From contig NC_086098.1 of NCBI RefSeq assembly GCF_963921235.1, positions 242,668,001 through 242,732,000 on the forward strand: 64,000 nucleotides of DNA, in the 5' to 3' direction. A program made the position numbers and the translations under genes. Below are positions 1 to 55,730 of the stretch, one piece after another (positions within the stretch are counted from its first letter, which is position 1; every line of letters begins with the position of its first letter). The notes below the pieces were generated by a model. It saw nothing but the letters and a program-made list of their open reading frames with translations, was not told where the DNA came from and searched no databases. Source of the stretch: Mobula hypostoma (lineage: Eukaryota).

Positions 1-590
1 GAGAGTAGGATAATAGAATGAGAGGGATAATAAATCAACCACGATGGAACGACGGAACAGACTCAATGGGCTAAATGGTCTATTTCTGATCCTATATTTA
101 TCGTCTCTTATGGTCTTCTAATGATAGCCAGGTGTGTTGCAGGAAGAGAACGCAGGCCTCTGATCAAAGGCAACACACTCAAAATACCAGAGGAACTCAG
201 CAGGTCAGGCAGCATCCACGGAAGGGAATAAACAGTCAGTGTTTCAGGCCGAGACCCTTCACCAGGACTGGAAAAGAAAGGGGCAAATGCCAGAATAAGA
301 AAGTGGTGGGAGGGGAGGAGTACAAGCTGACAGGTGATAGGTGAGACCAGGTGAGGGGAAGGATGATCAGCATCGTCTGTGTTGCTCTAAATTTCCAGCG
401 TCTGCAGAATCTCTTGTTTTTGAAGGGTTGTGGGAGATGGAAAGGGTTATAGAAACAGGGAAGTAATTCACTTCCTGGTATTCCTGTGACCCTGACTGAC
501 TGCTGACAGTGCCTTCAGAGACCTCTCTCCCTACCTCTCCTCCCCTGCCTGACCTTGAACCTGACCAGCACTGCTTCTCACTGGACTCAC

Positions 591-4260: not shown

Positions 4261-5112
4261 TGAGAGGGTGCAGCGGAGATTTACCAGGAGGCTGCCTGGA
4301 TTAGACAGCATGGCTGATGAGGAAAGGTTGAGCGAACTAGGGATTTTATCTTTGGAGAGAAGGAGGCTGAGAGGTGACTTGGTAAATGTGTACAAGATGA
4401 TAAGAGGCATATATCAAATGAGTAGCCAGAGACCTTTCCCAGGATGGAAATAGACCAGAAGACATCCTTTTAAGGTGATTGGTGGAAAGTAGGAGGGGGT
4501 GGCAGATGTAGTTTCTTTTAAAACAGAGAGTAGTAAGTGCATTGAACAGGCTGCCGGGGGTGGGGGGTAGAGGCAGATACATTAAGGACATTAAGATAGG
4601 CACATGGATGAAAGAAAAATGGTGGGCTATGTGGGAGGGAAGGGTTAAATTGATCACTGAGTAGATTAAAAGGTCAGCACAACATCATGGACCGAAGGGC
4701 CTGTACTGTTCTATAAAGTTGCTAAACGTATTGAACATGGAAGATATTGGTAGTGATGTGTTTTGCCTGAAAATCTAATGGAGCGTTACAAAGTTATGAA
4801 GTGGGGCGAAAGAGGGCATGGGTGGGGGAAGAGGAGAGGTGTGGTAAGGAGGAGGTTGTCTGGAGGGGTGTGGGGGTAGATGGGGGAGAGAATGTGAGGG
4901 AAAGGAGATGGGAGGGGAGATGCAGGGGAGATGAGAAAGAATGGAAGAAGAGTGGTGTGAGGGAGAGGAGTGTGGCAGGGTAGAGGGAAGGGGAGGGGAA
5001 GGAGGAGGAGGGAGCTTTGGGGGAGAGGAGAAGGGGAGGAGGTGGATGCTTGGGGGAGAGAGAAGGGGGGGAAGGAGAGGAGGAGGAAGAGAAGGAAGAA
5101 GGGAGGTCCTAC

Positions 5113-6834: not shown

Positions 6835-7315
6835 TCTTTATACTTTATACTTTATTGTCGCCAAACAATTGAGACTAGAGCGTAGAATCATCACAGTGAT
6901 ATTTGATTCTGCTCTTCGTGCTCCCTGGAGTACAAATCTATAGTAAATATTAAAAATTTAAATTATAAATCATAAATAGAAAATAGAAAAGGGGAAGTAA
7001 GGTAGTGCAAAAAAACCGAGAGGCAGGTCCGGATATTTGGAGGGTACGGCCCAGATCCGGGTCAGGATCCGTTCAGCAGTCTTATGGAAAGAAGATGTTC
7101 CCAAATCTGGCCGTACGAGTCTTCAAGTTCCTGAGCCTTCTCCCGGAGGGAAGAGGGACGAAAAGTGTGTTGGCTGGGTGGGTCGTGTCCTTGATTATCC
7201 TGGCAGCACTGCTCCGACAGTGTGCGGTGTAAAGTGAGTCCAAGGATGGAAGATCGGTTTGTGGGATGTGCTGTGCCATGTTCACAATCTTCTGCAGCTT
7301 CTTCCGGTCTTCGGA
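6835..7315 (-). mobile_element. Rex1/Babar-type LINE 3' end
   Basis: DTTHPANTLFVPLPSGRRLR; highly similar by eye to the 48726-49403 copy. Confidence 0.8.
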
Positions 7316-8008
7316 CAGTGGAGAGGAATAGAATGTTGGCCTGAAACATTGTCTCTTTATTCCTCTCCATAGATGTTGCCTGACCTGCTGAGTTCCACCA
7401 GCATTTTGTGTGTGTTACTCCGGATTTCCAGCATCTGCAGAATTTCTTGTGCTTACAATATAGTCGGGGACCCCTCCCGCCCACCCCAGACATTCTCTCT
7501 TGTCCCCTCTCCCATCAGACGGAAGATACAAAAGCCTGAAAGCATGAACCACCAGGCTCAAGGACAGCTTCTATCCCACTGTTATCAGACTGTTAATGGG
7601 CCTCTCACCCTAAAGATGAATTCTTATCCTCTCTATCTACTTCATCATGGCTCCTGCACTTTGTCTGTCTGTATCTGTAACACTCTATTCTGTATTCTGG
7701 CACTGCTTTTCGCTTTGTACTACGTCTATGTACGGAGGTTTGCAATCGTCTGTTTGGATGGCAAACAAATGTTTTCCATGCTATCTCAATATACATGGCA
7801 ATAAGAGGCTAATTACTAATATCATTGATTCCTTCACTGGGGTAACCTTTGCTTTCGATTCAGTTCACTGGTCCTCCAACTCTTGAAAATGGACCCCTCC
7901 CCACTTTTGGGGGCGGAGGGTGGAGTTGTTCAGCAGGGGAGGTTGGAGTGTGAACAGGATTACTGGGGTTTCAAGGCTGAGGAGGGGGTGGTGGATTTTG
8001 TGTCTCAC

Positions 8009-14510: not shown

Positions 14511-14980
14511 TAGGGAAGGGAGGGGGAGGGAATTACCGGAAGTTGGAGAATTCTATGTTCATACCAAGGGGCTGGAGACTACCTAGACAGTATATGAAGT
14601 GTTGCTCCTCCAACCTGAGTTTAGCCTCATCATGGTAGTACAGGAGGCCATGTGTAGACATATCCGAATGGGAATGTGAAGCAGAGTTGAAGTGGGTGGC
14701 AACCAGGAGATCCTGTCTGTTGTGGTGGATGGAGCAGAAGTGCTCGACGAAGCCGTCCCCCAATCTGCGTCGGGTTTCACCGATGTAGAGGAGGCTGCAC
14801 TGGGAGCACCGGGTGCAATAGATGACCCCAACAGACTCACAAGTGAAGTATTGTCTCACCTGGAAGGACTGTTTGGGGCCCTAAATGGTGGCAAGAGAGG
14901 AGGTGTAGGGACAGGTGTAGCACTTAACGCTTACAGGGATAAGTGCCGGGTGGGAGATCTGTGGGGAGGGACGTGTGGAT
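14510..14980 (-). mobile_element. Penelope-like element fragment (GIY-YIG endonuclease region)
   Basis: ORF 14533-14859: GVIYCTRCSQCSLLYIGETRRRL...LRLEEQH...LQPLGMN. Confidence 0.85.
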
Positions 14981-14984
14981 CAGG

Positions 14985-15570
14985 GAGGGGATCTCAGAGG
15001 GAGTGAGGCAGATCTACAAGGGGATCTCAGAAGGAGTGAGGCAGATCTATGAGGGGATCTCAGTGAGGCAGATCTATGAGGGGATCTCAAAGGGACTGAG
15101 GCAGATCTATGAGGGGATCTCAGAGGGACTGAGGCAGATCTATGAGGGGATCTCAGAGGGACTGAGGCAGATCTATGAGGGGATTTCAGAAGGGACAGAG
15201 GCAGATCTATGAGGGGATCTCAGAGGGACTGAGGCAGATCTATGAGGGGATCTCAGAGGGGCTGAGACAGATCTATGAGGGGATCTCAGAGGGAGTGAGG
15301 CAGATCTATGAGGGGATCTCAGAGGGAGTGAGGCAGATCTATGAGGGGATCTCAGAGGGAGTGAGGCAGATCTATGAGGGGATCTCAGAGGGGCTGAGAC
15401 AGATCTATGAGGGGATTTCAGAGGGAGTGAGGCAGATCTATGAGGGGATCTCGGAGGGAGTGAGGCAGATCTATGAGGGGATCTCAGAGGGGCTGAGACA
15501 GATCTATGAGGGGATCTCAGAGGGAGTGAGGCAGATCTATGAGGGGATCTCAGATGGACTGAGGGATCTC
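14985..15570 (+). repeat. 33-bp minisatellite (gaggggatctcagagggactgaggcagatctat), about 17-18 copies
   Basis: Seen directly; produces the spurious YEGISEGLRQI ORFs. Degenerate units also at 14015-14098. Confidence 0.95.
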
Positions 15571-15749
15571 TGAGAGACTGAAGGAGTTCGCTGGGGGTCA
15601 GAGGAGTACAGAGGGGTTCCCTGTCAAACCAGGGGAGTCTCTGGGGAAATTGCAGGGATTTCTGAGAGGCATGGGGTTCTCTGGCGGACTGAGACAATGA
15701 CAGAGGCTCTGAGGTGATATTCCCCGCCCACCCCGAGGGTCATTCATTC

Positions 15750-16500: not shown

Positions 16501-17453
16501 GAGAGAGAGAGATTTTTCCCAGCCCAGAGTATTGGTGGAGGTGGTGGGGAGAGAGATTTCCCCTATCCCAGGTTGTTGGGAGGGCTGACACAGTTGATGT
16601 AGGGGAGGGGGAGGGTCCTAGGGTAGAGGGGTTTGGGGATCTGCAGACACTAGGGTAGGGGTGTGGGAGAGTTCCGTCCCCCCACCAGTCCCAGAAAGAT
16701 CCTGCATTCAGGGCGGTGGGAGAGGGGACGGAAGTTGAGGGAGGTGAATGGTGATCTGGTCAGGATCTGGAGGCATGGATGAGTGGGAGCGGGAGGTGGA
16801 GGTGGGTAATGCAAAGGAAGGAGGGGCTTGGGTTAGATTAAGATGGGGGTGGAAAATGTGGGGCTGGATTGAGCGGGAGGTCCTGGGCACGTGGGTGCAG
16901 GAAGAAATGGACAGCAGCAGGGAGTAGGCTGAAAGGTGATTGGGAAGGGATCCTGGCTACAGCATCACTATGTGAGCAGGGAGTTTTGTGTCCACGTTTG
17001 GGCTGTGAGGAGATCCTGGCCCCAGAGGCCCCATCGTTCTGAGGGAGATGGGGTGGAGAGGCTGCTAGGAACAGGGAGCGCCGTGCTGCCGGAGAGGCAG
17101 TGAGTGGAGAGAGCCGCGCTGTGGTAAAGGCGGCGAGGAGGGAGCGCTGTGCTGTGGGGGTGGAAATGAGGAGGGAGAGCCGCACTCCAGAGAGGCAGCA
17201 AGAATGAAGCGCTGCGCTCGGGGAGAGGCGATGAGGGAGCACTGCCCTCCGTGAGGGGCATCTTCCCCCAGCTAACCTTCCTCCCTTGCACAACGTGACA
17301 GATGAACATGCAGTGTGGAGGACTGTGGTATCTTGCTGTGTGCGTTGCAGTGGCCCGGGGTGTAGGGAGTGAGTCTCCGGCCGCCCTCCCCGCCCCAGCG
17401 TTAATGGCCGTGCCCACGCGGGCCGCTGTTTGTTGTTGTAGAGCCGCCATGCC

Positions 17454-17538
17454 ATGTTCCGCCAGATGCTGCGAGCCGTGATGCTGGCTCCTCGCCTGGG
17501 CCACTGTGCCAAGTGGAGGGAGCTCACCTGGAGTCCCG
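17454..17538 (+). CDS. FDPS: FDPS upstream coding exon giving an N-terminal extension (MFRQMLRAVMLAPRLGHCAKWRELTWSP)
   Basis: Acceptor ttgtag ending 17441, donor G|gtaagc after 17538; 85 coding nt, phase 1; splices in frame to 22121 (G-R-L-T-M). Confidence 0.7.
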
Positions 17539-20500
17539 GTAAGCTGGGCCACGAAGGATGGGGGCTGCCCGTGGGGAGGAGACTACCCATGTTCCCATGG
17601 CCTGTTGACCTGTTCTCAACCCCATTTTGACCCGCATAACCCCTGACCCTGTCTTGACCCTTTCCTAACCCGCATGTTAGAGTCACTTTGCGCTACAGCA
17701 CAGAAACTGGCCATTCGGCCCATTGAGTCTAAGCTGGCCTGGTATTCTACTTGGTTCCATCTGCCTACACCCGGACCATAGCCCTGCATACCCCTCCCAT
17801 CTGCATTCTTTTCAAAACTTCTCTTGCATGTTACAATCAAACACGCATCCATTACTTCCACTGGCAGCTTGGTTCACGTTCACACCACACTCAAGTTCCC
17901 CTTAAATATTTCATTTTCCACCCTGAACCAATGACCTCTGGTTCTAGGCTCGTCCAAGATGAAGGGACGTCCAAGATGCCTGTCTGTAGCCATCATAATT
18001 TTTTATACCTCAAAGGTTCATTTTATTATCAAAGTATGTGTGCAGGATGTGTGAGATTCGTCTTCTCCAGATCCATGAAATACAGAAAGACCATGGACAT
18101 CATTGAAAGAAAAGACATCAACCCCCCCACCCCACAAGAAAAAGAAACAAAAGCTCGCAAACCCTAAACTCCCCCCTTGCACAAAAACGAACAGATCGCC
18201 CACATGGAAAATGGCAGCTAGAGCACCAAATCCCCAATCCCCTCCCTCGCAAAAAAAACTTAACATATTGCCCTCAAGGAAAACAAAACAGGGGAAAACC
18301 CTGACGCCCCCCCCCCCCGGATACAGAAAAACACTAACAAGAACATTAATCCCCAAATCCCCATCCCCTCCCTCGCACAAAAATGAACATATCGCCCACA
18401 AGGACATCAAACCCCCGACCCACCAATCGGCAACACGAAAGAAAACTGAAGGAGACCAATGTAAACTACACTCCACACCAATAATCACATAAATCTCAGA
18501 ATTTCAAAACCATCCTCCATCAGCATCGAGGAGAACAACTGCTTGGAATCAGTTCTTCTGTGGAAAGTGTCCACCAACCAGGCCTCCTCCACATTCGCCT
18601 CGATAAGACCTCCCCTCATTCTCCTACGCTCCAAGAAATAAAGTCCTAACCTATTCAACCTTTCCCGAGAACTCAGGTCCTGGCAACATCCACGTAATCT
18701 TCCTTAGTACTCTTTCAAGCTTACTAATATAATTCCTGTAGCTGGTGACCAGATATCCACACGATACTCCAAATTTTCCCTTGCCAGCATCTTATACAAT
18801 TTCAACATTACATCCCAACTCCTATACTCAATACATTGATTTATGAAGGCCAATGTGCCGAAGGCTTTCTATTCTATCCTATCTACCGGTGACACCACTT
18901 TCAAGGAATTATGGATCTGTATTCCCAGATCCCTCTGTTCCACCACTCTCCTCAGTGCCCGACTGTTCACAGTGGCCTACCCTGGCCAGCACCTCACACT
19001 TGTCTGCACTAAGTTCCATCTGCTATTTTTCCAGTTGGTCCAAATAACTTTGCAAGCTTTGCTGGGCTTTCTTGCTGCCCAGATTTTGACCCACATAAAT
19101 TCGTGTCCCCTGCTCAAACCTATGCTGGCCCCACCTTGACCCCCATAACCTCCCTAATCCTGTATTAACTCTTCCTCGACGCTGACTCCGAATCTAAATA
19201 CCGTGACCCTTGTCCTGTCTCCTCTTCAATCCCACCTTGACCCCCGACCTCACCTTGAACTTGCTGTGATCCCCACGACCTCAACCCCAACTTGGCTTCG
19301 CCCCGCCGGCCCCAACCCCAGACGCCCCGCAGTCGGTGCAGAACCGGCGCTCGAAGGTCCAGCCCTCACACCTGGCCAAGTGCGGGCAGCGTAATGCCAG
19401 TACACAGCAAGATCCCACAGCTCTTCCCATGCAGTTGGCCGTGGGTTGAAATGTTTGCTTCCTCATTGCGTGTAGTGGGGTTTGCTGACAATGTGGATGG
19501 TGGCCTTGGGTAGTGAGGTGATGAGAGTCACACAGCATGAAAACAGACCCTTCAGCCCATCTCGGACCATGTTGTCCAGCAAGCAAGTTCCCCCTGCCCA
19601 CAGCTCTTTACACCTCCCCTTATCTAGATGGCTTTTAAACTTTTCTAATGTGCCTGCTTCAACCACGATTTGTGACAGCTCGTTCCAACTACCCACTGCC
19701 CCTGAAATCCCTTTCAAGCCTCTCCCCTCTGATCTTAAACCTATGCCCGCTTGATTTTTCTTTTTGTACCCCCTCTCCAGGGGGAGGAAAGACTGTGTGT
19801 TACGTGTCCCACACAAAATGCTGGAGGAACTCAACAGGTCAGGTGGCACCTATGGTACGGAATGAGGAGTTGACGTCTCGGCCCTTCATCGGGGCACAGG
19901 ACAAAGGTCTCGGCCCGAAACGTCGACTCTTTATTCTCCTGCATAAGTGCTGCCTGGCCTGCTGAGTTCCTCCACCTTTTTGTGTGTGTTGCTCTGGATT
20001 TCCAGCTTCTGCAGAATCTCTTTTTTTTTTGTGTTTCATTGTTTGAAATGCAAAACCTCGGATTAAATTCCTTTTGCCGCTGCTCAGTCAAACTTTCCAT
20101 CTGAATAATATCCTACTTTTCTCGCTGTCCTCAACACTAGTCTTCTCATCGCCTGAGGGAGCGTATGTGGGCTATAACTCTGATAAATGTTAGGAGATGC
20201 ATTCTAATGAGGGCAAGACATGCCCAGGAACGGTGGGGTCTTGGGGAATTCTGGGGACCCTTGGTATTCAAGCCTGATGATCCTTGAAGGTGGCAATGCA
20301 GGTGAAGGCACACGGGTTACGGGCCTCCACTGGACACCTTGTACTCTGTCTCTATAAGCCACCGGCCAGACCTTGTGTGTGCAGACCTGGTCACTGCACT
20401 ACAGGAAGGATGTGATGGCGTTAGAGAGAGCGCAGAGGAGATTCCCCAGGATTGTTGCCCGTTAGGAATGTTTCAGTTAATTGGGAGGCTGGGTCTGTCC

Positions 20501-23228: not shown

Positions 23229-23379
23229 GTGAGTGTGTCTGCCGTACCCACTCCTGCCCCTCCCAGTCACCCAGACAACTCCAGTCTGAGAGGGTGCCTC
23301 CCTTCCGTCCTACATCCCCAACTCCACGCTGCCCTGCCGATTCCGACCTGAGAGCACATCTCCCCCACTGATCAACCCC

Positions 23380-24000
23380 CATTCATCTCTCCTTACCTGT
23401 CACCCCGACTACTCCATAACCTCCACCTTCCCCCTATCCACACCCTCTCCCCCCTCCCCTCCCTCCCTCCCTCCCTCCCCCCCTCCCCCCATCCATCTCT
23501 CCTTACCTGTCACCCCGACTACTCCATAACCTCCACCTTCCCCCTATCCACACCCCCTCCTCCCCTCCCCTCCCCTCTTCTCCTCCCCTCTTCTCCTCCC
23601 CTCTTCTCCTCCCCTCTTCTCCTCCCCTCTTCTCCTCCCCTCTTCTCCTCCCCTCTTCTCCTCCCCTCTTCTCCTCCCCCTCCCCTCCCTCCCTCCCTCC
23701 CTCCCTCCCTCCCTCCCTCCCCTCTCCCCTCCCTCCCTCCCTCCCCTCTCCCCTCCCTCCCTCCCTCCCCCATCCATCTCTCCTTACCTGTCACCCCGAC
23801 TACTCCATAACCCCCACCTTCCCCCTATCCACACCCCCTCCTCCCCTCCCCTCTCCTCCTCTCCTCCTCCCCTCTCCTCCTCCCCTCTCCTCCTCCCCTC
23901 TCCTCCTCCCCTCCTCTCCTCCCCTCCCCTCCTCTCCTCCCCTCCTCTCCTCCCCTCCTCCCCTCTCCCCTCTCCTCCCTCTCTCCCCTCTCCTCCCTCA
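23380..24000 (+). repeat. Polypyrimidine (C/T) simple repeats with three copies of a ~60-bp anchor
   Basis: The anchor catctctccttacctgtcaccccgactactccataacc recurs near 23385, 23493 and 23775. Confidence 0.85.
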
Positions 24001-24176
24001 ATTGGAGGGTGACCCCAGAGAGCTGGGCTGATCTGCGTTCTCTGCCTCTCTGTCTTTCCATCCCTCCCCATCCAACCCCCATTCCCCATCCACCCCCCCC
24101 GTCTCCCTGCCCTCGGTGCCGTGGGAGAGGGGCGACCCCAGAGACAGGGCTGACCTCCACTCTCTCCTGTGTCTAG

Positions 24177-30464: not shown

Positions 30465-30599
30465 GACGATTACCTGGACTGCTATGGAGACCCTGAGGTG
30501 ACCGGTAAGGTCGGTACAGACATTGAGGACAACAAGTGTAGCTGGCTGGTGGTTCAAGCACTGAAGAGTGTCACTCCCAAACAGAGGAGGGTGTTAGAG
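30465..30599 (+). CDS. FDPS: FDPS exon with the second Asp-rich motif ([30 protein letters not shown]...)
   Basis: 135 nt; SARM DDYLD; donor gtaagt. Confidence 0.97.
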
Positions 30600-30892
30600 G
30601 TAAGTGCCCCTTGAGCAACAGCTCTGAGCAGAACAGGTCCTGCGGCCCATCGCTTGGCTGCAATATTGTGAGCACATAGAGCTGTATAGGCCCTTGGCCC
30701 ACAATAGTGTGCCAACTATATAAATTTACTCTGGAAAGGTGCAAAACACTGAAAAGTTTCCATAAGACATCGACGTAGAAATCAGCTATCGCTACTGCTC
30801 CACCATTCATTCATAGAACATTCCAGCACAGTACAGGCCCTTCGGTCCACGATGTTGTGCCGACCTTCTAACCTACTCGAAGGTTAATCTAA

Positions 30893-31519
30893 AACAACAG
30901 GAATTCTGCAGATGCTGGAAATACAAGGGAAAGCAGGATCTCCCAGTGGCCACACATTTTGATTCCACATCCCATTCCCATTCTGACATGTCTATCCACG
31001 GCCTCCTCTACTGTCAAGATGAAGCCACACTCAGGTTGGAGGAACAGCACCGTATATTCCGTCTGGGTAGCCTCCAACCTGATGGCATGAACATTGACTT
31101 CTCTAACTTCCGCTAATGCCCCACCTCCCCCTCGTACCCCATCTGTTATTTATATATATATATATACACACACACATTCTCTCTCTCTCTCCTTTTTCTC
31201 CCTCTGTCCCTCTCACTATACCCCTTGCCCATCCTCTGGGTTCCCCCTCTCCCTTTTACTTCTCCCTGGGCCTCCTGTCCCATGATCCTCTCGTATCCCT
31301 TTTGTCAATCGCCTGTCCAGCTCTTGGCTCTATCCCTCCCCGTCCTGTCTTCTCCTATCATTTTGCATCTCCCCCTCCCCCTCCCACTTTCAAATCTCTT
31401 ACTCACTCTTCCTTCAGTTAGTCCTGACGAAGGGTCTCAGCCTGAAACGTCGACTGTACCTCTTCCTAGAGATGCTGCCTGGCCTGCTGCGTTCACCAGC
31501 AACTTTGATGTGTGTTGCT
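30893..31519 (+). mobile_element. 5'-truncated Penelope-like element with a 13-bp TSD, nested in a CR1 3' fragment
   Basis: TSD AAGGTTAATCTAA at 30880-30892 and 31520-31532; encodes the GIY-YIG C-terminal segment (LEEQHRIFRLGSLQPDGMNIDFSNF); starts with an inverted terminal segment. Confidence 0.85.
31420..31455 (+). ncRNA. Minimal type I hammerhead ribozyme motif within a Penelope-like element
   Basis: AGTC-CTGACGA-A-GGGT(CTCA)GCCT-GAAA-CG-TC|GACT: complete core, helix I AGTC/GACT, short helix II, palindromic helix III (ACGT). Confidence 0.7.
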
Positions 31520-32699
31520 AAGGTTAATCTAATTCTTCCCTCCTACATAGCCCTTAATTTAATCATCCATGTGCCTTTTTGAGTCTTTTAAATGCCCTTA
31601 GTGTATCTGCCCTGTACCACCAGTCCTGGCTGTGTGTTCCACATACCCACCATTCTGTAAAAACACCCAACTTCAAATTTTCCTCGTCACCTTAAATGGA
31701 CGTCCTCTGGTATTGGCCATTGCCACCCTGGGAAAAAGGCACTGACTGTTCACTGTATCTCTGCTTCTCATAATCTTATACGCCTTTACCAAGTCACAGC
31801 TCATCTTCCTTTGCTTCAAAGAGCCCCAGCTTGCTCAGCCTTTCACATCTGGAGTACTGTGTGTCCTGTTATAGGACGGGCGTGGAGGCTCACCAGGACT
31901 GGACGACAAGAGGTTGGGAAACTCGGCTTGTTTTCTATTGAGCGGTGAGACTGAGGTTTATAAAATTGAGGGGCAGGATAGAGATTTTTTTAATATACAG
32001 AATAGAGATTCCTATTGCCAAGATAGAAATGTCATACATGTAAGGCAAGTGGAAGAAAGTATAAAGGAGATGTGTGCGGCAAGTTTTTTTTAATATATGC
32101 ACAGTGAGAGTGATGGGTGTCTGGAAAGGGCACCCAGGGGTGGCGGTGGTGGGGGCAGATATGATGGTGGTGAATATGCAGGGAATGGAGAGGCAGAAGT
32201 AGTTTAGTTTAATTCGGCATTGTGTCCAGCACAGACAATGTGGGCCGAAAGGCCTGTTCCTGTGCTGTAATGTTCTATTTACAGTAGTCCCATTCACCAG
32301 CATTCGATCTGTACCCTTCTCTGCCTTGGTGATTCAAGTGCTCGCCCAGATACTTAAACCTTGTGGGTCTCTGCTCCCACCAACCACTTGGGTTGCGTTC
32401 TTGGGTCCCACTTCCCCATGGGGGGGGGGGAATAAAATTCCCCCTCAAGTCTGCTTAAAGATGCAAGATCTAAAGATTAGCTTTATTGGTCATACATACA
32501 CCATACAGTGAAATTCATCATTCGGTTGATGACTACCGCAGTCTGAGCAAGTGTTGCTATGCTTCCAGCACCAACGTGATATGCCCACAACTTACTAACC
32601 CCGTTAGCCGAGGAAATTAGAGCACCCAAAAGAGATTCGCGTGGTCCCAGGGAGAATGTACAAACTCCTTACAGGCAGAAGAGCACTATGCTAGCAGAT

Positions 32700-33195
32700 A
32701 TGCCACCCCATCAGGAGGTACAGGAGAGGAACCCAGTGTGACCTTCTGCTGCTGTAGCCCATCCACTTCAAGTTTCAAAGTGTTGTGCAGAGATGTTCGT
32801 CTGCACACCACTGTTTGAACAGGTAGTTATTTGAGATATTGTCATCTTCTTGTCAGCTTGAACCAGTCTGTCCATTCTCCTCTGCCCTCCTTCATTAACA
32901 AGGTGTTTTTACCCACAGAACTGACACGCACTGGATTTTTTTTTCAGAACCATTCCCTGTTTAAATCTAGACTGTTGTGTGTGAAAATCCCAGCCGATCA
33001 GCAGTTTCTGAGATATCAAACAACCCTGTCTGGCACCAACAATCATTCCACAGTCATGGTCACTTAGATCACATTTCTTGCCTGTTCCGATGTTGGTCTG
33101 AACCTCTTGACCATGTCTGCATGCTTTTATGCATTGAGTTCCTGCCACGTGATTGGCTGATTAGATGGTTGTACTAATGAGCAGACGTACCTAAT
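32700..33195 (-). mobile_element. Tc1/mariner-derived non-autonomous remnant
   Basis: Minus ORF GKKCDLSDHDCGMIVGARQG resembles a Tc1 transposase N-terminal HTH segment. Confidence 0.65.
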
Positions 33196-33245
33196 GTACC
33201 CGAGTGTTTCCCCTGACCTTGTTCTTTCTCTCCCCGCGGATGCAG

Positions 33246-33446
33246 GAGAACTACGGCCAGCGGGAGCCGGAGAAGGTGGCGAGGGTGAAGGCTCTGTACA
33301 AGGAGCTGAGACTAGCTGAAGCCTTCCATCAGTATGAAAACCAGAGCTACCAGCAGCTGAGGGGGCTGGTGAGCGAGCACTGCAGCCGCCTGCCTCAGGA
33401 CGTCTTCCTCACCTTCGCTGACCGCATCTACAAGAGGAAGAAGTAG
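33246..33446 (+). CDS. FDPS: FDPS last coding exon (ENYGQREPEKVARVKALY...RIYKRKK*)
   Basis: 201 nt ending in TAG; basic C-terminal tail typical of FPPS. Short-isoform CDS totals 1059 nt (352 aa). Confidence 0.96.
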   Translation, partial: ENYGQREPEKVARVKALYKELRLAEAFHQYENQSYQQLRGLVSEHCSRLPQDVFLTFADRIYKRKK

Positions 33447-36604: not shown

Positions 36605-37007
36605 NNNNNNNNNNNNNNNNNNNNNNNNNNNNNNNNNNNNNNNNNNNNNNNNNNNNNNNNNNNNNNNNNNNNNNNNNNNNNNNNNNNNNNNNNNNNNNNN
36701 NNNNNNNNNNNNNNNNNNNNNNNNNNNNNNNNNNNNNNNNNNNNNNNNNNNNNNNNNNNNNNNNNNNNNNNNNNNNNNNNNNNNNNNNNNNNNNNNNNNN
36801 NNNNNNNNNNNNNNNNNNNNNNNNNNNNNNNNNNNNNNNNNNNNNNNNNNNNNNNNNNNNNNNNNNNNNNNNNNNNNNNNNNNNNNNNNNNNNNNNNNNN
36901 NNNNNNNNNNNNNNNNNNNNNNNNNNNNNNNNNNNNNNNNNNNNNNNNNNNNNNNNNNNNNNNNNNNNNNNNNNNNNNNNNNNNNNNNNNNNNNNNNNNN
37001 NNNNNNN
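36605..37007. other. Assembly gap (403 N)
   Basis: N run inside a RUSC1 intron; the flanking exon phases (2/2) close without a missing exon. Confidence 1.
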
Positions 37008-44785: not shown

Positions 44786-44984
44786 AAACACAAACACGAG
44801 GAATTCTGCAGATGCTGGAAATTCAAGCAACACACATAAAAGCTGGTGAACGCAGCAGGCCAGGCAGCATCCATAGGAAGAGGTACAGTCGACGTTTCGG
44901 GCCGGGACAGGTCCTGACTGTACCTCTTCCTATAGATGCTGCCCGGCCTGCTGCGTTCACCAGCATTATTTATGTGTGTTGCTC
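44786..44984. mobile_element. Palindromic Penelope-terminus mini-element with an 11-bp TSD
   Basis: TSD TGAAATTATAA at 44775-44785 and 44985-44995; two inverted copies of the terminal repeat. Related pieces at 170-420, 7370-7455 and 19805-20035. Confidence 0.75.
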
Positions 44985-49740: not shown

Positions 49741-50419
49741 GCAACCCTGGCTTAGTCCTCCCTCTCTAACCCCAGGGTCACCGGGTAATGACTATAAGCA
49801 GGAATGCTGGCTGGTTCCCCCTTCTCTCAAATCCTCTCTAGCTGCCCTGTCTAAATCCCCCCTTCCAAGCAACATTCCTCAAATACTCCCAGCTACTCTG
49901 CATTATATACAGCGGCTCCCCCAGAGTTCCCACCTCAGAATCAAGGAACAGAAAATTGGAGGGTTCTGTGGGAGGGAAGGGTTAGATTGATCTAGGAGCA
50001 GGTTAAAGGGTCAACACTAAATTGTGGGCTGAAGGGCCTGTGCTCTAAAATACTAACTGCTTTATTTTTCATATATTTATTTATTTATTCAGCAATTCAG
50101 CCCTTCTGGCCTAATGAGCCCACACTGCCCAATTAACCTATTAACTTGTATGTCTTTGGACTGTAGGAGGAAACCAGAGCACCCAGAGGAAACCCACATG
50201 GTCACCTGGAGAACATACAAACATGGGTGGGAATTGAACGCGGGTCGCATGCCCTGTGGTATGCCCATCGTGAACGCATATCTGACACGAAAACCCACCT
50301 TGACAGACACACACAACCACAGAAAAGAAAACCTGCTGGAACCTAATAAACAGCAAAGAAAAAGGCCCTTCAGCCCGAGACCATGCTGTCCCTCAACATT
50401 CTCTTTACATTGATCCCAA

Positions 50420-53478: not shown

Positions 53479-54109
53479 ATAATTCACTTCCTGGTATTCT
53501 GTCGCTGACTGATACCGGCGCTGCCCGCAGCAACCTCTCTCAGCAAGGCCCCACCTCTCACTCACCTCCCACACACGGCCGGAATTCGGCCCGGAACCCG
53601 CTCCCTCCTGCCCAGCCGATGTGTTCAGCCGGGGGTGTGGAGGCCGGGTTCCTGGCTCCCTGCAGCCATGTCTGAGCCCCGGGAGTCGGGAGCCGGGAGC
53701 CGGGACCAGGAAGCGGCAGGAACGCGATCCAACGGGCCCGGGCCCCTCCCGCTCGCATCAGTACGCTGTTAACCCCTGCACCACCACAGCCCTGTCATCA
53801 CAATGGTTCTGTCCTTCTGTGAGAGAACACACAACTCACACCTACTCAGACCACAAGTCCACCCAGCCAGCCTGGTTCTGCACAGCGCAGTACCGACCCT
53901 TCGGCCCACAATCATGTGCTAACCATTTAACCTCCTCCAAGATCAATCTAACCCTTCCCTCCCGAATAGCGCATACAGAGGTGAGGGTTTGACACGGACG
54001 GGGAGGGTCTGATGCTGACTGTAAGGGTTTTACAGGGACGGGGAGGGTTTTACAGGGAATACAAGGGGTTTCAGAAGTGGGTAAATAATTCATTTCCTGG
54101 TATATTTGT

Positions 54110-55730
54110 GACACATTTCTCTAGCATTGATGTACCTGTCTGAGAGTCTCTTAAATGTCACCCCTGACAGCACAGACCACGCACCCACCACTCTCTGTAA
54201 AAAAAAAACTTACTTCTGACATCTCCCCTACACTTTCATCTAACCACCTTAAAATTATGCTCTCTTGTATTAGCCACTTCCACCCTGGGGGAGAAAGTCT
54301 CTGGCTGTCCACTCAATCAATGCCTCTTATCATCCAGTACACAAGTCACCTCTCACCCTCCGTTCCAAAGGGAAAAGCCCCAGCTCGCTCAACCTTCCCT
54401 CATAAGACACGCTCTCTAATCCAGGCAGCATCCTGGTAAATCTTCTCAGCACCCTCTCCAAAGCTTCCACATCTTCTCCACAATAGGGCAACCAGAACTG
54501 AACACGATACCCCAAGTGGGTTCTAACCAGGGTTTTATAAGCTGCCACATTACCTCACAGCTCTGGAACTCAGTTCTTCTACCATTCGACCATGACTGAT
54601 TTATTTTACCTCTCAACCCCATTCCCTTGTCACCTTTAGTCCTCAATAATCAAGGACTGGTTAGCATGAAACTCTGGTTAGGCCACACTTGGAGTACTGT
54701 GTCCAGTTCTGGTCGCCTCACTATAGGAAGGATGTGGAAGCATTGGAAAGGGTACAGAGGAGATTTACCAGGATGCTGCCTGGTTTAGAGAGTATGGATT
54801 ATGATCAGAGATTAAGGGAGCTAGGGCTTTACTCTTTGGAGAGAAGGAGGATGAGAGGAGACATGATAGAGATGTACAAGATAATAAGAGGAATAGATAG
54901 AGTGGATAGCCAGCACCTCTTCCCCAGGGCACCACTGCTCAATACAAGAGGATGTGGCTTTAAGGTAAGGGGTGGGAAGTTCAAGGGGGATATTAGAGGA
55001 AGGTTTTTTACTCAGAGAGTGGTTGGTGCGTGGAATGCACTGCCTGAGTCAGTGGTGGAGGCAGATACACTCGTGAAATTTAAAAGACTACTAGACAGGT
55101 ATATGGAGGAATTTAAAGTGGGGGGGTTATATGGGAGGTAGGGTTTGGGGGTCAGCACAATATTGTGGCCAAAGGGCCTGTAATGTGCTGCACTATTCCA
55201 TGTCCTATTACAGCTTGGGCACTCAAGTCAATTCCGACGCCATTCTGTAAGGAATCTCTTTACTTGCTCTCCATGGAACGTTCGAATATTCTCCAAGTCC
55301 ACCAGTTTCCCCCTACAGTGCAAAGACAGACCAGGTAGGTTAACTGGGCATTGAAAACTGTCCCGTGATTAGGTTATTGTTAATCGGGTTTGTCAGGCGT
55401 TTCTGGGGTGGTGTGGCTCAAAGGGTCGACTCCTCTCTCGATTACTAAATAGATAAATACACCTGTGCTTTAAATACACCCAGTGACTTGGCTCCCACAG
55501 CTCTGTGGCAATGAATTCCACAGATTCACCATGCTCAGGCTAAACAAATTCCTCCTCATCTCTGTTCTAAGGTTGTGCTTTCTGGTCTAGACTCCCCCAC
55601 TGTGGGAAACATCCTCTCCACATCCACTCCGTCTAGGCCTTTCAATATTCGATAAGTTTCAATGAAATCCCCTCGCTCCCCCCCCCCCATTCTTCTAAAC
55701 TCCAGTGAGTACAGACCCAGGGTCATCAAA
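54110..55730. mobile_element. CR1 3' fragments in alternating orientation (minus 54110-54600, plus 54660-55200, minus 55460-55730)
   Basis: ORFs 54330-54548 (minus) and 54689-55141 (plus) carry the same CR1 C-terminal motifs. Confidence 0.85.

What the first reader, a model, noticed from the sequence alone, without database searches (positions are those of the whole stretch)
31419..31456. Intact minimal hammerhead ribozyme core, sense to the FDPS pre-mRNA, delivered by a recent Penelope insertion
Seen: AGTC CTGACGA A GGGT-CTCA-GCCT GAAA CG TC|GACT. All core hammerhead nucleotides are present (CUGAnGA, GAAA, GUC triplet). Helix I has 4 bp plus a wobble, helix II is short, and helix III is reduced to the palindrome ACGU; predicted cleavage is after 31451. 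It sits in a 627-bp element with a perfect 13-bp TSD in the last FDPS intron, on the transcribed strand. Established: Penelope-like elements carry minimal hammerheads with a palindromic helix III that cleave mainly as dimers. Inference: this is the only copy in the window with an unmutated core, so it could cut FDPS pre-mRNA if it pairs in trans with other family transcripts; a lone copy may be inert.
Basis: partly seen in the sequence, partly recalled or inferred. Interest (0 to 1): 0.75.

Follow-up and report, generated by a model that had tools for sequence, protein, structure and literature searches.

The report
Penelope retrotransposon hammerhead in FDPS intron
A real but ordinary copy of the tiny "hammerhead" self-cutting RNA motif that Penelope-like jumping genes carry has landed, in the sense direction, in the last intron of the ray's FDPS gene. 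Alone it almost certainly cannot cut, so it is best read as a harmless passenger.

Summary
At 31419-31456 (+) there is a complete minimal type-I hammerhead: CUGACGA, GAAA, GUC, helix I of 4 bp plus a wobble, and palindromic ACGU as helix III. A structure-aware scan finds it once in the window against 0.005 expected. It lies 64 nt from the 3' end of a 627-bp, 5'-truncated Penelope-like element (PLE) with a perfect 13-bp target duplication. The element sits sense in the 2,646-nt last coding intron of FDPS. All other family copies in the window have broken cores.

The functional reading is weak.
- The motif matches the published PLE "min-HHR", including the bulged base before helix II. Single copies of that motif show no cleavage in vitro, and dimers cleave poorly.
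- This copy has no tandem partner.
- Its helix II carries two CpG-type changes. One turns the conserved G10.1-C11.1 pair into G·U.
- Its lowest-energy monomer fold pairs core bases G5-G8 with the cleavage site.
- In a swapped dimer, the cut at 31451 would be made by the partner's core, not by this copy's own.

The available runs were contigs only, so RNA ends could not be mapped. The scan has already noted this family hundreds of times elsewhere in this genome. It is a new member of a known kind, of low interest.

The parts
31419..31423 (+). Helix I, 5' strand (U-AGUC). It pairs with 31452-31456 as 4 Watson-Crick pairs plus a terminal U·G.
31424..31430 (+). Core box C3-A9 (CUGACGA).
31431..31431 (+). 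Unpaired A between A9 and G10.1. This is the bulged nucleotide typical of PLE min-HHRs.
   Evidence: The feature is described in PMC4209133.
31432..31443 (+). Helix II hairpin GGGU-CUCA-GCCU (G·U, G-C, G-C, U·G), -2.0 kcal/mol. 31439 A and 31443 T differ from the closest relatives by CpG-type transitions.
   Evidence: (family depth carries G at 31439 in 72-90%).
31444..31451 (+). G12-A14, then the palindromic helix III ACGU (31447-31450), then C17. The predicted scissile bond lies between 31451 and 31452.
31452..31456 (+). Helix I, 3' strand (GACU-G).
30893..31519 (+). The 627-bp 5'-truncated Penelope-like element insertion.
30893..30928 (-). Inverted copy of the PLE 'tail'. This is the ~33-nt extension that follows ...GTGTGTTGCT in other copies. 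Here it sits at the element's 5' edge and faces outward.
   Evidence: same tail after the 3' end of the 44.8-kb (-) copy. (joints 30922/31519 on opposite strands in all four runs; the loose-end consensus behind 31519 is the reverse complement of 30903-30925).
30929..31116 (+). C-terminal end of the PLE ORF (end of the GIY-YIG endonuclease domain, ...LGSLQPDGMNIDFSNFR) and its stop codon.
   Evidence: 73% identity to the paralogous ORF 14536-14859(-); that ORF scores 0.95 to eukaryotic GIY-YIG clusters; the ORF continues upstream of 30929 in other copies.
31117..31418 (+). CT-rich untranslated region between the ORF and the hammerhead (pseudo-LTR part).
31457..31519 (+). 3' terminal segment with the best-conserved family block (GATGCTGCCTGGCCTGCTG ... 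GTGTGTTGCT). The element ends at the shared family terminus, presumably the internal reverse-transcription start.
   Evidence: the invariant columns cluster here. PMC11167929 for internal RT initiation.
30880..30892 (.). Target-site duplication, left copy (AAGGTTAATCTAA).
31520..31532 (.). Target-site duplication, right copy.
30600..33245 (+). Last coding intron of FDPS (GTAAGT...CAG, 2,646 nt), which hosts the insertion.

Best explanation
What it is. The motif is the standard minimal type-I hammerhead that Penelope-like retrotransposons carry in their pseudo-LTR. It is here because a 5'-truncated PLE cDNA was inserted into an older repeat inside the last FDPS intron, making a 13-bp target duplication. 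That cDNA comprised the end of the GIY-YIG ORF, the untranslated region, the hammerhead and the 3' terminus, plus a short inverted 'tail' at the other edge.

How it behaves. It is transcribed passively as part of the FDPS pre-mRNA and removed with the intron. Helix III is only the palindrome ACGU, so the motif cannot close a catalytic three-way junction alone. It would need a second family copy to form a strand-swapped double hammerhead. There is no such partner in the intron, helix II is weakened, and the monomer prefers an inactive hairpin. This copy is therefore most likely catalytically silent and without function for FDPS.

Shown: the motif, the insertion, its orientation, its homology to PLE ends, and the folding energies. 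Inferred: inactivity in vivo.
For: - Motif and significance.
- Insertion proven by the empty-site comparison.
- PLE identity. The ORF end is 73% identical to a 108-aa GIY-YIG-type ORF elsewhere in the window. That ORF resembles eukaryotic GIY-YIG clusters at 0.95.
- PLE ends. The family shares the 3' terminus, and an optional tail appears in other copies, as described for PLEs (PMC11167929).
- Match to the published min-HHR. [quoted passage not shown]
- Abundance. The hammerhead bin has the highest family depth in all four runs of two related species.
- Inertness from folding. The monomer MFE of -11.0 kcal/mol pairs G5-G8 with CGUC. The hammerhead-like monomer scores -7.0, and the double hammerhead -11.5 against -22 for two free monomers. 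In 115 nt of context no hammerhead fold forms and z is 0.27. Helix II is worth only -2.0 kcal/mol.
- Inertness from the literature. Single min-HHRs show no detectable cleavage and dimers cleave poorly (PMC4209133). The Anolis PLE hammerhead cleaves only with PLE protein, and no RNA-seq reads end at its cut site (PMC11167929).
- No second descriptor hit anywhere in the window.
- Intronic copies are commonplace: 42-44% of Xenopus retrozyme copies lie in introns (bioRxiv 10.64898/2026.07.22.740005).
Against: - All invariant core nucleotides and C17 are intact, and helix I is complementary. Activity in a dimer with an abundant family transcript, or with help from PLE protein or chaperones, cannot be excluded.
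- Nearest-neighbour energies ignore the tertiary contacts of the hammerhead core.
- No RNA-end data could be obtained. All available runs are contigs.
Confidence: 0.85

Rival explanations
1. The copy is active in trans. It pairs with abundant transcripts of the same PLE family, possibly helped by PLE protein, to form double hammerheads. The partner's core then cuts the FDPS pre-mRNA at 31451, and this copy's core cuts the partner, measurably lowering or modulating FDPS mRNA output.
For: The core boxes, C17, helix I and palindromic helix III are intact. The family is extremely abundant, and its hammerhead segment is the deepest bin also in runs guessed to be RNA. The PLE hammerhead is protein-assisted in Anolis (PMC11167929).
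Against: - The dimer has only 14 intermolecular base pairs and competes with a -11 kcal/mol intramolecular hairpin in each partner.
- The G10.1 pair is degraded to G·U.
- Dimers cleave weakly even in cis in vitro (PMC4209133).
- No cut-site ends were seen in Anolis RNA-seq.
- Cleavage inside an intron need not affect mRNA yield.
- The 'RNA' label of runs X5 and X12 is a guess.
Confidence: 0.07
2. The motif has been exapted as a conserved intronic regulator of FDPS mRNA biogenesis, like the intronic hammerheads of amniote RECK, CTCL and DTNB.
For: Sense orientation within an intron. Precedent reviewed in PMC6155905.
Against: - There is no Rfam hit to Hammerhead_1, HH9 or HH10, even at E<=10.
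- Helix III is not stable and the motif is not monomer-competent.
- The copy is accumulating CpG decay in helix II.
- The insertion still has a perfect TSD, so it is a young passenger rather than an anciently conserved element.
Confidence: 0.02
3. The hammerhead-like string is a chance match with no relation to ribozymes.
For: No Rfam hammerhead model scores it.
Against: Expected 0.005-0.01 per window against one observed. It sits at the homologous position of a repeat family whose other copies carry decayed versions of the same motif. It matches the published PLE min-HHR feature by feature.
Confidence: 0.01

Closest known systems
Minimal hammerhead ribozymes (min-HHR) of metazoan Penelope-like elements (Cervera & de la Peña 2014, PMC4209133; Lünse, Weinberg & Breaker, RNA Biol 14:1499, cited in PMC6765202)
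   Same: Type-I topology. CUGANGA / GAAA / GUC core. Unpaired nucleotide between A9 and 10.1. Helix III reduced to a palindrome (ACGU). Helix I of 4-5 bp. Location in the PLE terminal repeat next to an RT/GIY-YIG ORF. Dispersed mostly as single truncated copies.
   Different: In this copy the usually conserved G10.1-C11.1 pair is G·U. Helix II is short (4 pairs, two of them wobbles), where the Schistosoma families have 6-8 bp. No cleavage data exist for this family.
Poseidon PLE of Anolis carolinensis (PAc; Frangieh et al. 2024, PMC11167929)
   Same: Hammerhead near the pLTR-ORF junction. Insertions end at an internal RT start site. An optional 30-40-nt 'tail' is present in a fraction of copies. 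Both DNA strands can be primed, which fits the inverted tail at the 5' edge here.
   Different: In PAc the ORF start overlaps helix II. Here an ATG lies 20 nt downstream of the cut site, and whether it starts the ORF was not tested. Clade assignment (Poseidon or Neptune) was not made.
Conserved intronic hammerheads of amniotes (RECK, CTCL, DTNB; Rfam HH9/HH10; reviewed in PMC6155905)
   Same: A type-I hammerhead lying sense within an intron of a protein-coding gene.
   Different: The amniote motifs are canonical, with stable helices and loop-loop contacts. They are active as monomers and ultraconserved. This one gives no Rfam hit, needs a dimer, and is a lineage-specific transposon passenger.
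Non-LTR retrozymes (tandem type-I hammerhead repeats that give circRNAs; PMC7229834; bioRxiv 10.64898/2026.07.22.740005)
   Same: Derived from PLE terminal repeats. Same kind of hammerhead.
   Different: Retrozymes are tandem arrays whose adjacent hammerheads dimerise in cis. Here there is one copy, attached to an ORF remnant.

Membership tests
PLE minimal type-I hammerhead (min-HHR) | Core boxes CUGANGA and GAAA, with a UH cleavage triplet in type-I order. | tested here: met
   31424-31430, 31444-31447 and 31450-31451.
PLE minimal type-I hammerhead (min-HHR) | Helix III absent or reduced to a palindrome (15.1-16.1), so that two copies can form an extended helix III. | tested here: met
   ACGU at 31447-31450. 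The descriptor required a palindrome.
PLE minimal type-I hammerhead (min-HHR) | Unpaired nucleotide between A9 and 10.1 (a recurrent emergent feature). | tested here: met
   A31431. Feature listed in PMC4209133.
PLE minimal type-I hammerhead (min-HHR) | G10.1-C11.1 closing pair of helix II. It is highly conserved and typical, but was not part of the published search descriptor. | tested here: not met
   G31432 pairs with U31443. The relatives at 19897(+) and 44826(-) have C there, while those at 169(-) and 7310(+) also have T. The C is in a CpG, so this is a decay-type change in a homologous copy. It does not argue against common descent.
PLE minimal type-I hammerhead (min-HHR) | Short helix I (4-5 bp) flanking the core. 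| tested here: met
   31419-23 with 31452-56: 4 Watson-Crick pairs plus one wobble.
PLE minimal type-I hammerhead (min-HHR) | Self-cleavage, mainly as a dimer. | not testable with these tools
   Only contig-level runs were available. Energies disfavour the dimer.
Penelope-like element insertion | ORF ending in a GIY-YIG endonuclease domain upstream of the hammerhead-bearing terminal repeat. | tested here: met
   The ORF end at 30929-31113 is 73% identical to the ORF at 14536-14859(-). That ORF carries GVIY...YIG motifs and scores 0.95 to eukaryotic GIY-YIG clusters. Pfam GIY-YIG reaches only E=0.084, below its threshold. No RT domain is present in this truncated copy.
Penelope-like element insertion | Shared internal 3' terminus with an optional ~30-40-nt tail. 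Target-site duplication. | tested here: met
   Family copies end at GTGTGTTGC(T). The tail follows in the 44.8-kb copy and in many contigs.
Canonical type-I and intronic amniote hammerheads (Rfam RF00163, RF02275, RF02277) | Score to the covariance model at or near the gathering threshold. | tested here: not met
   No hammerhead family matched at the gathering threshold in the window, nor at E<=10 in 31300-31600.
Non-LTR retrozyme | Head-to-tail tandem repeats, each with a hammerhead. | tested here: not met
   There is a single motif in the window and no tandem copy.

The most novel reading that the evidence does not exclude
In ray nuclei, PLE-family transcripts and PLE protein are abundant enough that sense intronic min-HHR copies such as this one form trans double hammerheads. 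FDPS pre-mRNA would then be cut at 31451 by a partner's core, and this copy's intact core would cut other RNAs. That would be a transposon-imposed layer of pre-mRNA cleavage on a sterol-pathway gene.
Probability: 0.04. Interest if true: 0.6.

Novelty: new member of a known kind. Interest (0 to 1): 0.12.

Why it matters
As it stands it matters little. It is one more passenger copy of a ribozyme motif that Penelope-like elements have scattered in huge numbers through non-mammalian vertebrate genomes.

The case does sharpen one general and testable question: do sense-oriented, core-intact min-HHRs in introns of expressed genes cut in vivo? If they do, intact sense copies should be depleted from introns relative to antisense or core-mutated copies of equal age. 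This ray genome, with its very large family, would be a good place to run that test.

Tried and rejected
- Rfam, at gathering thresholds over the whole window and at E<=10 locally, gave no hammerhead hit. This is expected, because the models require a helix III hairpin.
- My first fixed-spacing pattern had the wrong gap length and missed the site. I corrected it.
- I scanned JGI metagenome contigs with an anchor downstream of the motif, hoping for unbiased family copies to test conservation. All 116 loci matched only the 19-mer by chance. A family-wide comparison of core and flanks could therefore not be done.
- The six in-window relatives are old and decayed. They show the downstream block, not the hammerhead, as the best conserved part. 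Among dead copies this reflects neutral and CpG decay rather than selection.
- The sequencing runs gave only Logan contigs, with their RNA status guessed. Read laying therefore showed no molecule ends (table 6: none).
- Read laying did not resolve whether the sister species (organism B) has the insertion. No bridging or skipping contig was listed among the rows shown.
- CpG observed/expected in the element (0.36) equals the intron background (0.37), so it does not date the insertion.
- Lünse et al. (PMC5785218) is not held in the library.
- Pfam did not recognise the 62-aa ORF end.

Full report
**1. The observation**

The window reads, from 31419: U-AGUC CUGACGA A GGGU CUCA GCCU GAAA CG UC|GACU-G.

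- All invariant hammerhead positions are present: C3-A9 at 31424-31430, G12-A14 at 31444-31446, A15.1 at 31447, U16.1 at 31450 and C17 at 31451.
- Helix I is 31419-23 with 31452-56: four Watson-Crick pairs plus a U·G.
- Helix III is only the palindrome ACGU.
- The pattern CUGANGA-N6-24-GAAACGUC occurs once, against 0.01 expected.
- An RNAmotif-like descriptor of my own asked for helix II of at least 3 bp with an optional bulge, a palindromic helix III, UH and helix I of at least 3 bp. On both strands it finds only this site, against 0.005 expected.
- Rfam's hammerhead models do not score it, at gathering thresholds or at E<=10 on 300 nt. That fits a motif without a helix III hairpin.

Helix II is a bulged A (31431) followed by G·U, G-C, G-C, U·G and loop CUCA. 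It is worth only -2.0 kcal/mol.

**2. The carrier**

A perfect 13-bp direct repeat (30880-92 and 31520-32) brackets 627 bp. When the flanks are joined with one repeat copy, four other copies of the surrounding older repeat run straight across the junction. This is therefore a true insertion with a target-site duplication.

The insert has two parts.

- **Inverted tail, 30893-30928.** These 36 nt are the reverse complement of the "tail" that follows the family's 3' terminus (...GTGTGTTGCT) in the copy at 44.8 kb and in many contigs. The contig evidence is the joints 30922/31519 on opposite strands in all four runs, and the loose-end consensus behind 31519.
- **5'-truncated body, 30929-31519.**
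  - It begins with the last 62 codons of an ORF and its stop. In other copies the ORF continues upstream of 30929.
  - Then come about 300 nt of CT-rich untranslated sequence, the hammerhead, and 64 nt to the shared terminus.

Evidence that the ORF is a GIY-YIG endonuclease end:

- The ORF end is 73% identical to a 108-aa ORF at 14536-14859(-).
- That ORF has GVIY...YIG motifs and resembles eukaryotic GIY-YIG clusters at 0.95.
- Pfam gives it only E=0.084.

A GIY-YIG ORF end, a hammerhead in the terminal repeat, an internal 3' terminus with an optional tail, and priming from both strands are the published signature of Penelope-like elements (PMC4209133; PMC11167929). There are no AATAAA or ATTAAA signals on the sense strand of the element.

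**3. Gene context**

Polyprenyl-synthase exons with the DDIMD and DDYLD motifs lie on the + strand. Pfam PF00348 supports them at 4.8e-11 and 4e-15.

- The exon ending ...KQRRVLE stops at 30599 before GTAAGT.
- The next exon starts at 33246 after a pyrimidine tract and CAG.
- That exon ends ...RIYKRKK*.

The hammerhead therefore lies sense, 820 nt into the 2,646-nt last coding intron.

**4. Other copies**

BLAST and nhmmer find six related 3' ends in the window. None has an intact core.

| Copy | State of the motif |
|---|---|
| 169-351(-) | CUGGUGA and GAAACACU |
| 7288-7415(+) | No 5' box; GAAACAUU |
| 19897-19993(+) | 5' box lost |
| 19815-19895(-) | CCGAUGA and no GAAAC |
| 44826-44931(-) | 5' box lost |
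| 44914-44983(+) | Starts only after the cleavage site |

Relative to its closest relatives, this copy has two derived CpG-type transitions in helix II.

- 31439 is A. The family carries G in 72-90% of summed contig depth.
- 31443 is T. This changes the otherwise highly conserved G10.1-C11.1 pair to G·U (feature from PMC4209133).

**5. How it most likely works, or does not**

With a two-base "loop", helix III cannot form within one molecule. The active form of such motifs is a double hammerhead with an extended intermolecular helix III (PMC4209133, PMC6155905, PMC6765202).

From the type-I strand order it follows that the dimer is strand-swapped. Copy A contributes C3-A9, helix II, G12-A14 and 15.x. 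Copy B contributes 16.x, C17 and the 3' strand of helix I. A's core therefore cuts B. This is my inference from the topology.

The intact core in the FDPS intron would thus cut a partner. Cutting FDPS pre-mRNA at 31451 needs a partner with an intact core. No such partner exists in the intron or elsewhere in the window.

Energetics:

| Fold | Energy (kcal/mol) |
|---|---|
| Monomer MFE: rod that pairs G5-G8 with C15.2-C17 | -11.0 |
| Hammerhead-like monomer | -7.0 |
| Swapped dimer | -11.5 |
| Two free monomers | -22 |

In 115 nt of context no hammerhead fold appears and the stability is unremarkable (z = 0.27).

Experiments on related motifs point the same way.

- A single min-HHR showed no detectable cleavage, and dimers cleaved weakly (PMC4209133).
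- The Anolis Poseidon hammerhead cleaved only with PLE protein. It was dispensable for insertion in vitro and left no RNA-seq ends at its site (PMC11167929).

I therefore rate the copy as an inert passenger that is spliced out with the intron (confidence 0.85). Trans activity with abundant family RNA remains possible (about 0.07).

**6. Age**

The perfect TSD bounds divergence only loosely. The probability that 13/13 stay identical is 0.26 at 5% divergence and 0.065 at 10%. Two of the five CpGs in the motif have already decayed. CpG observed/expected equals the background.

The orthologous intron exists in a sister species at about 97% identity (record 31). The rows shown do not tell whether the insertion is there.

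**7. Reads**

Only contig-level runs were available, so RNA ends, strand and level cannot be read.

- The bin containing the hammerhead has the highest summed family depth in all four runs. This confirms an extremely abundant family in two related species.
- Contigs of run X5 (guessed to be RNA) cover the unique intron flanks without mismatch (records 17 and 21). Their RNA nature is unproven.

**8. What is known, and novelty**

PLE min-HHRs are published for fishes, coelacanth, amphibians and reptiles, in thousands of mostly solitary copies (PMC4209133). In Xenopus, 42-44% of related retrozyme copies lie in introns.

Earlier notes of this scan record 436 hammerhead/Penelope findings in this same genome. 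Those notes call it a devil ray. They include an unchecked count of more than 80,000 intact-looking copies, and fold-back tail insertions like those I saw.

This is a new member of a known kind. The only particular point is its sense position in an FDPS intron, for which there is no evidence of consequence.

Noticed in passing
window 30893-30928: The first 36 nt of the insertion are an inverted copy of the PLE 'tail'. The insert thus looks like the product of priming from both strands of the target, with one arm aborted after about 36 nt. This fits the two-strand cleavage and extension and the two RT start sites reported for the Anolis PLE.
   Followed up: partly
window 44793-44983 and 19804-19993: Two head-to-head inverted pairs of PLE 3' ends, with their junctions in or at the hammerhead. 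At 44.8 kb the (+) arm begins at GACTGTACC, the first base after the predicted cleavage site. That could reflect cDNA run-off on ribozyme-cut RNA, or it could be coincidence.
   Followed up: partly
window 14533-14859 (-): A 108-aa ORF with GVIY...YIG motifs, which is the endonuclease end of a second, 76%-related PLE copy. The reverse-transcriptase part was not looked for upstream.
   Followed up: partly
window 17442-17630 (+): An ORF starting MFRQMLRAVMLAPRLGH... lies upstream of the first recognised FDPS coding exon (about 22.1 kb). Another first-stage note calls it a hidden FDPS presequence exon. If that is right, the PLE pair at 19.8-20.0 kb would also lie within the FDPS transcription unit.
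   Followed up: no
window 30808-30892 and 31533-31563 (also 4563-4720, 49960-50044, 53883-53970, 54895-55202): The PLE inserted into an older high-copy repeat, whose depth is also very high in both species.
   Followed up: partly
window 14943-15700: A 30-nt tandem repeat that is open on both strands (…RQIYEGISEG… and …SPHRSASLPLR…), immediately next to the PLE ORF remnant.
   Followed up: no
window 23350-24030: A long proline/serine/leucine-rich low-complexity repeat, open in three frames, inside an FDPS intron.
   Followed up: no
window 36605-37007: A run of 403 N (assembly gap or masked). It was left untouched.
   Followed up: no
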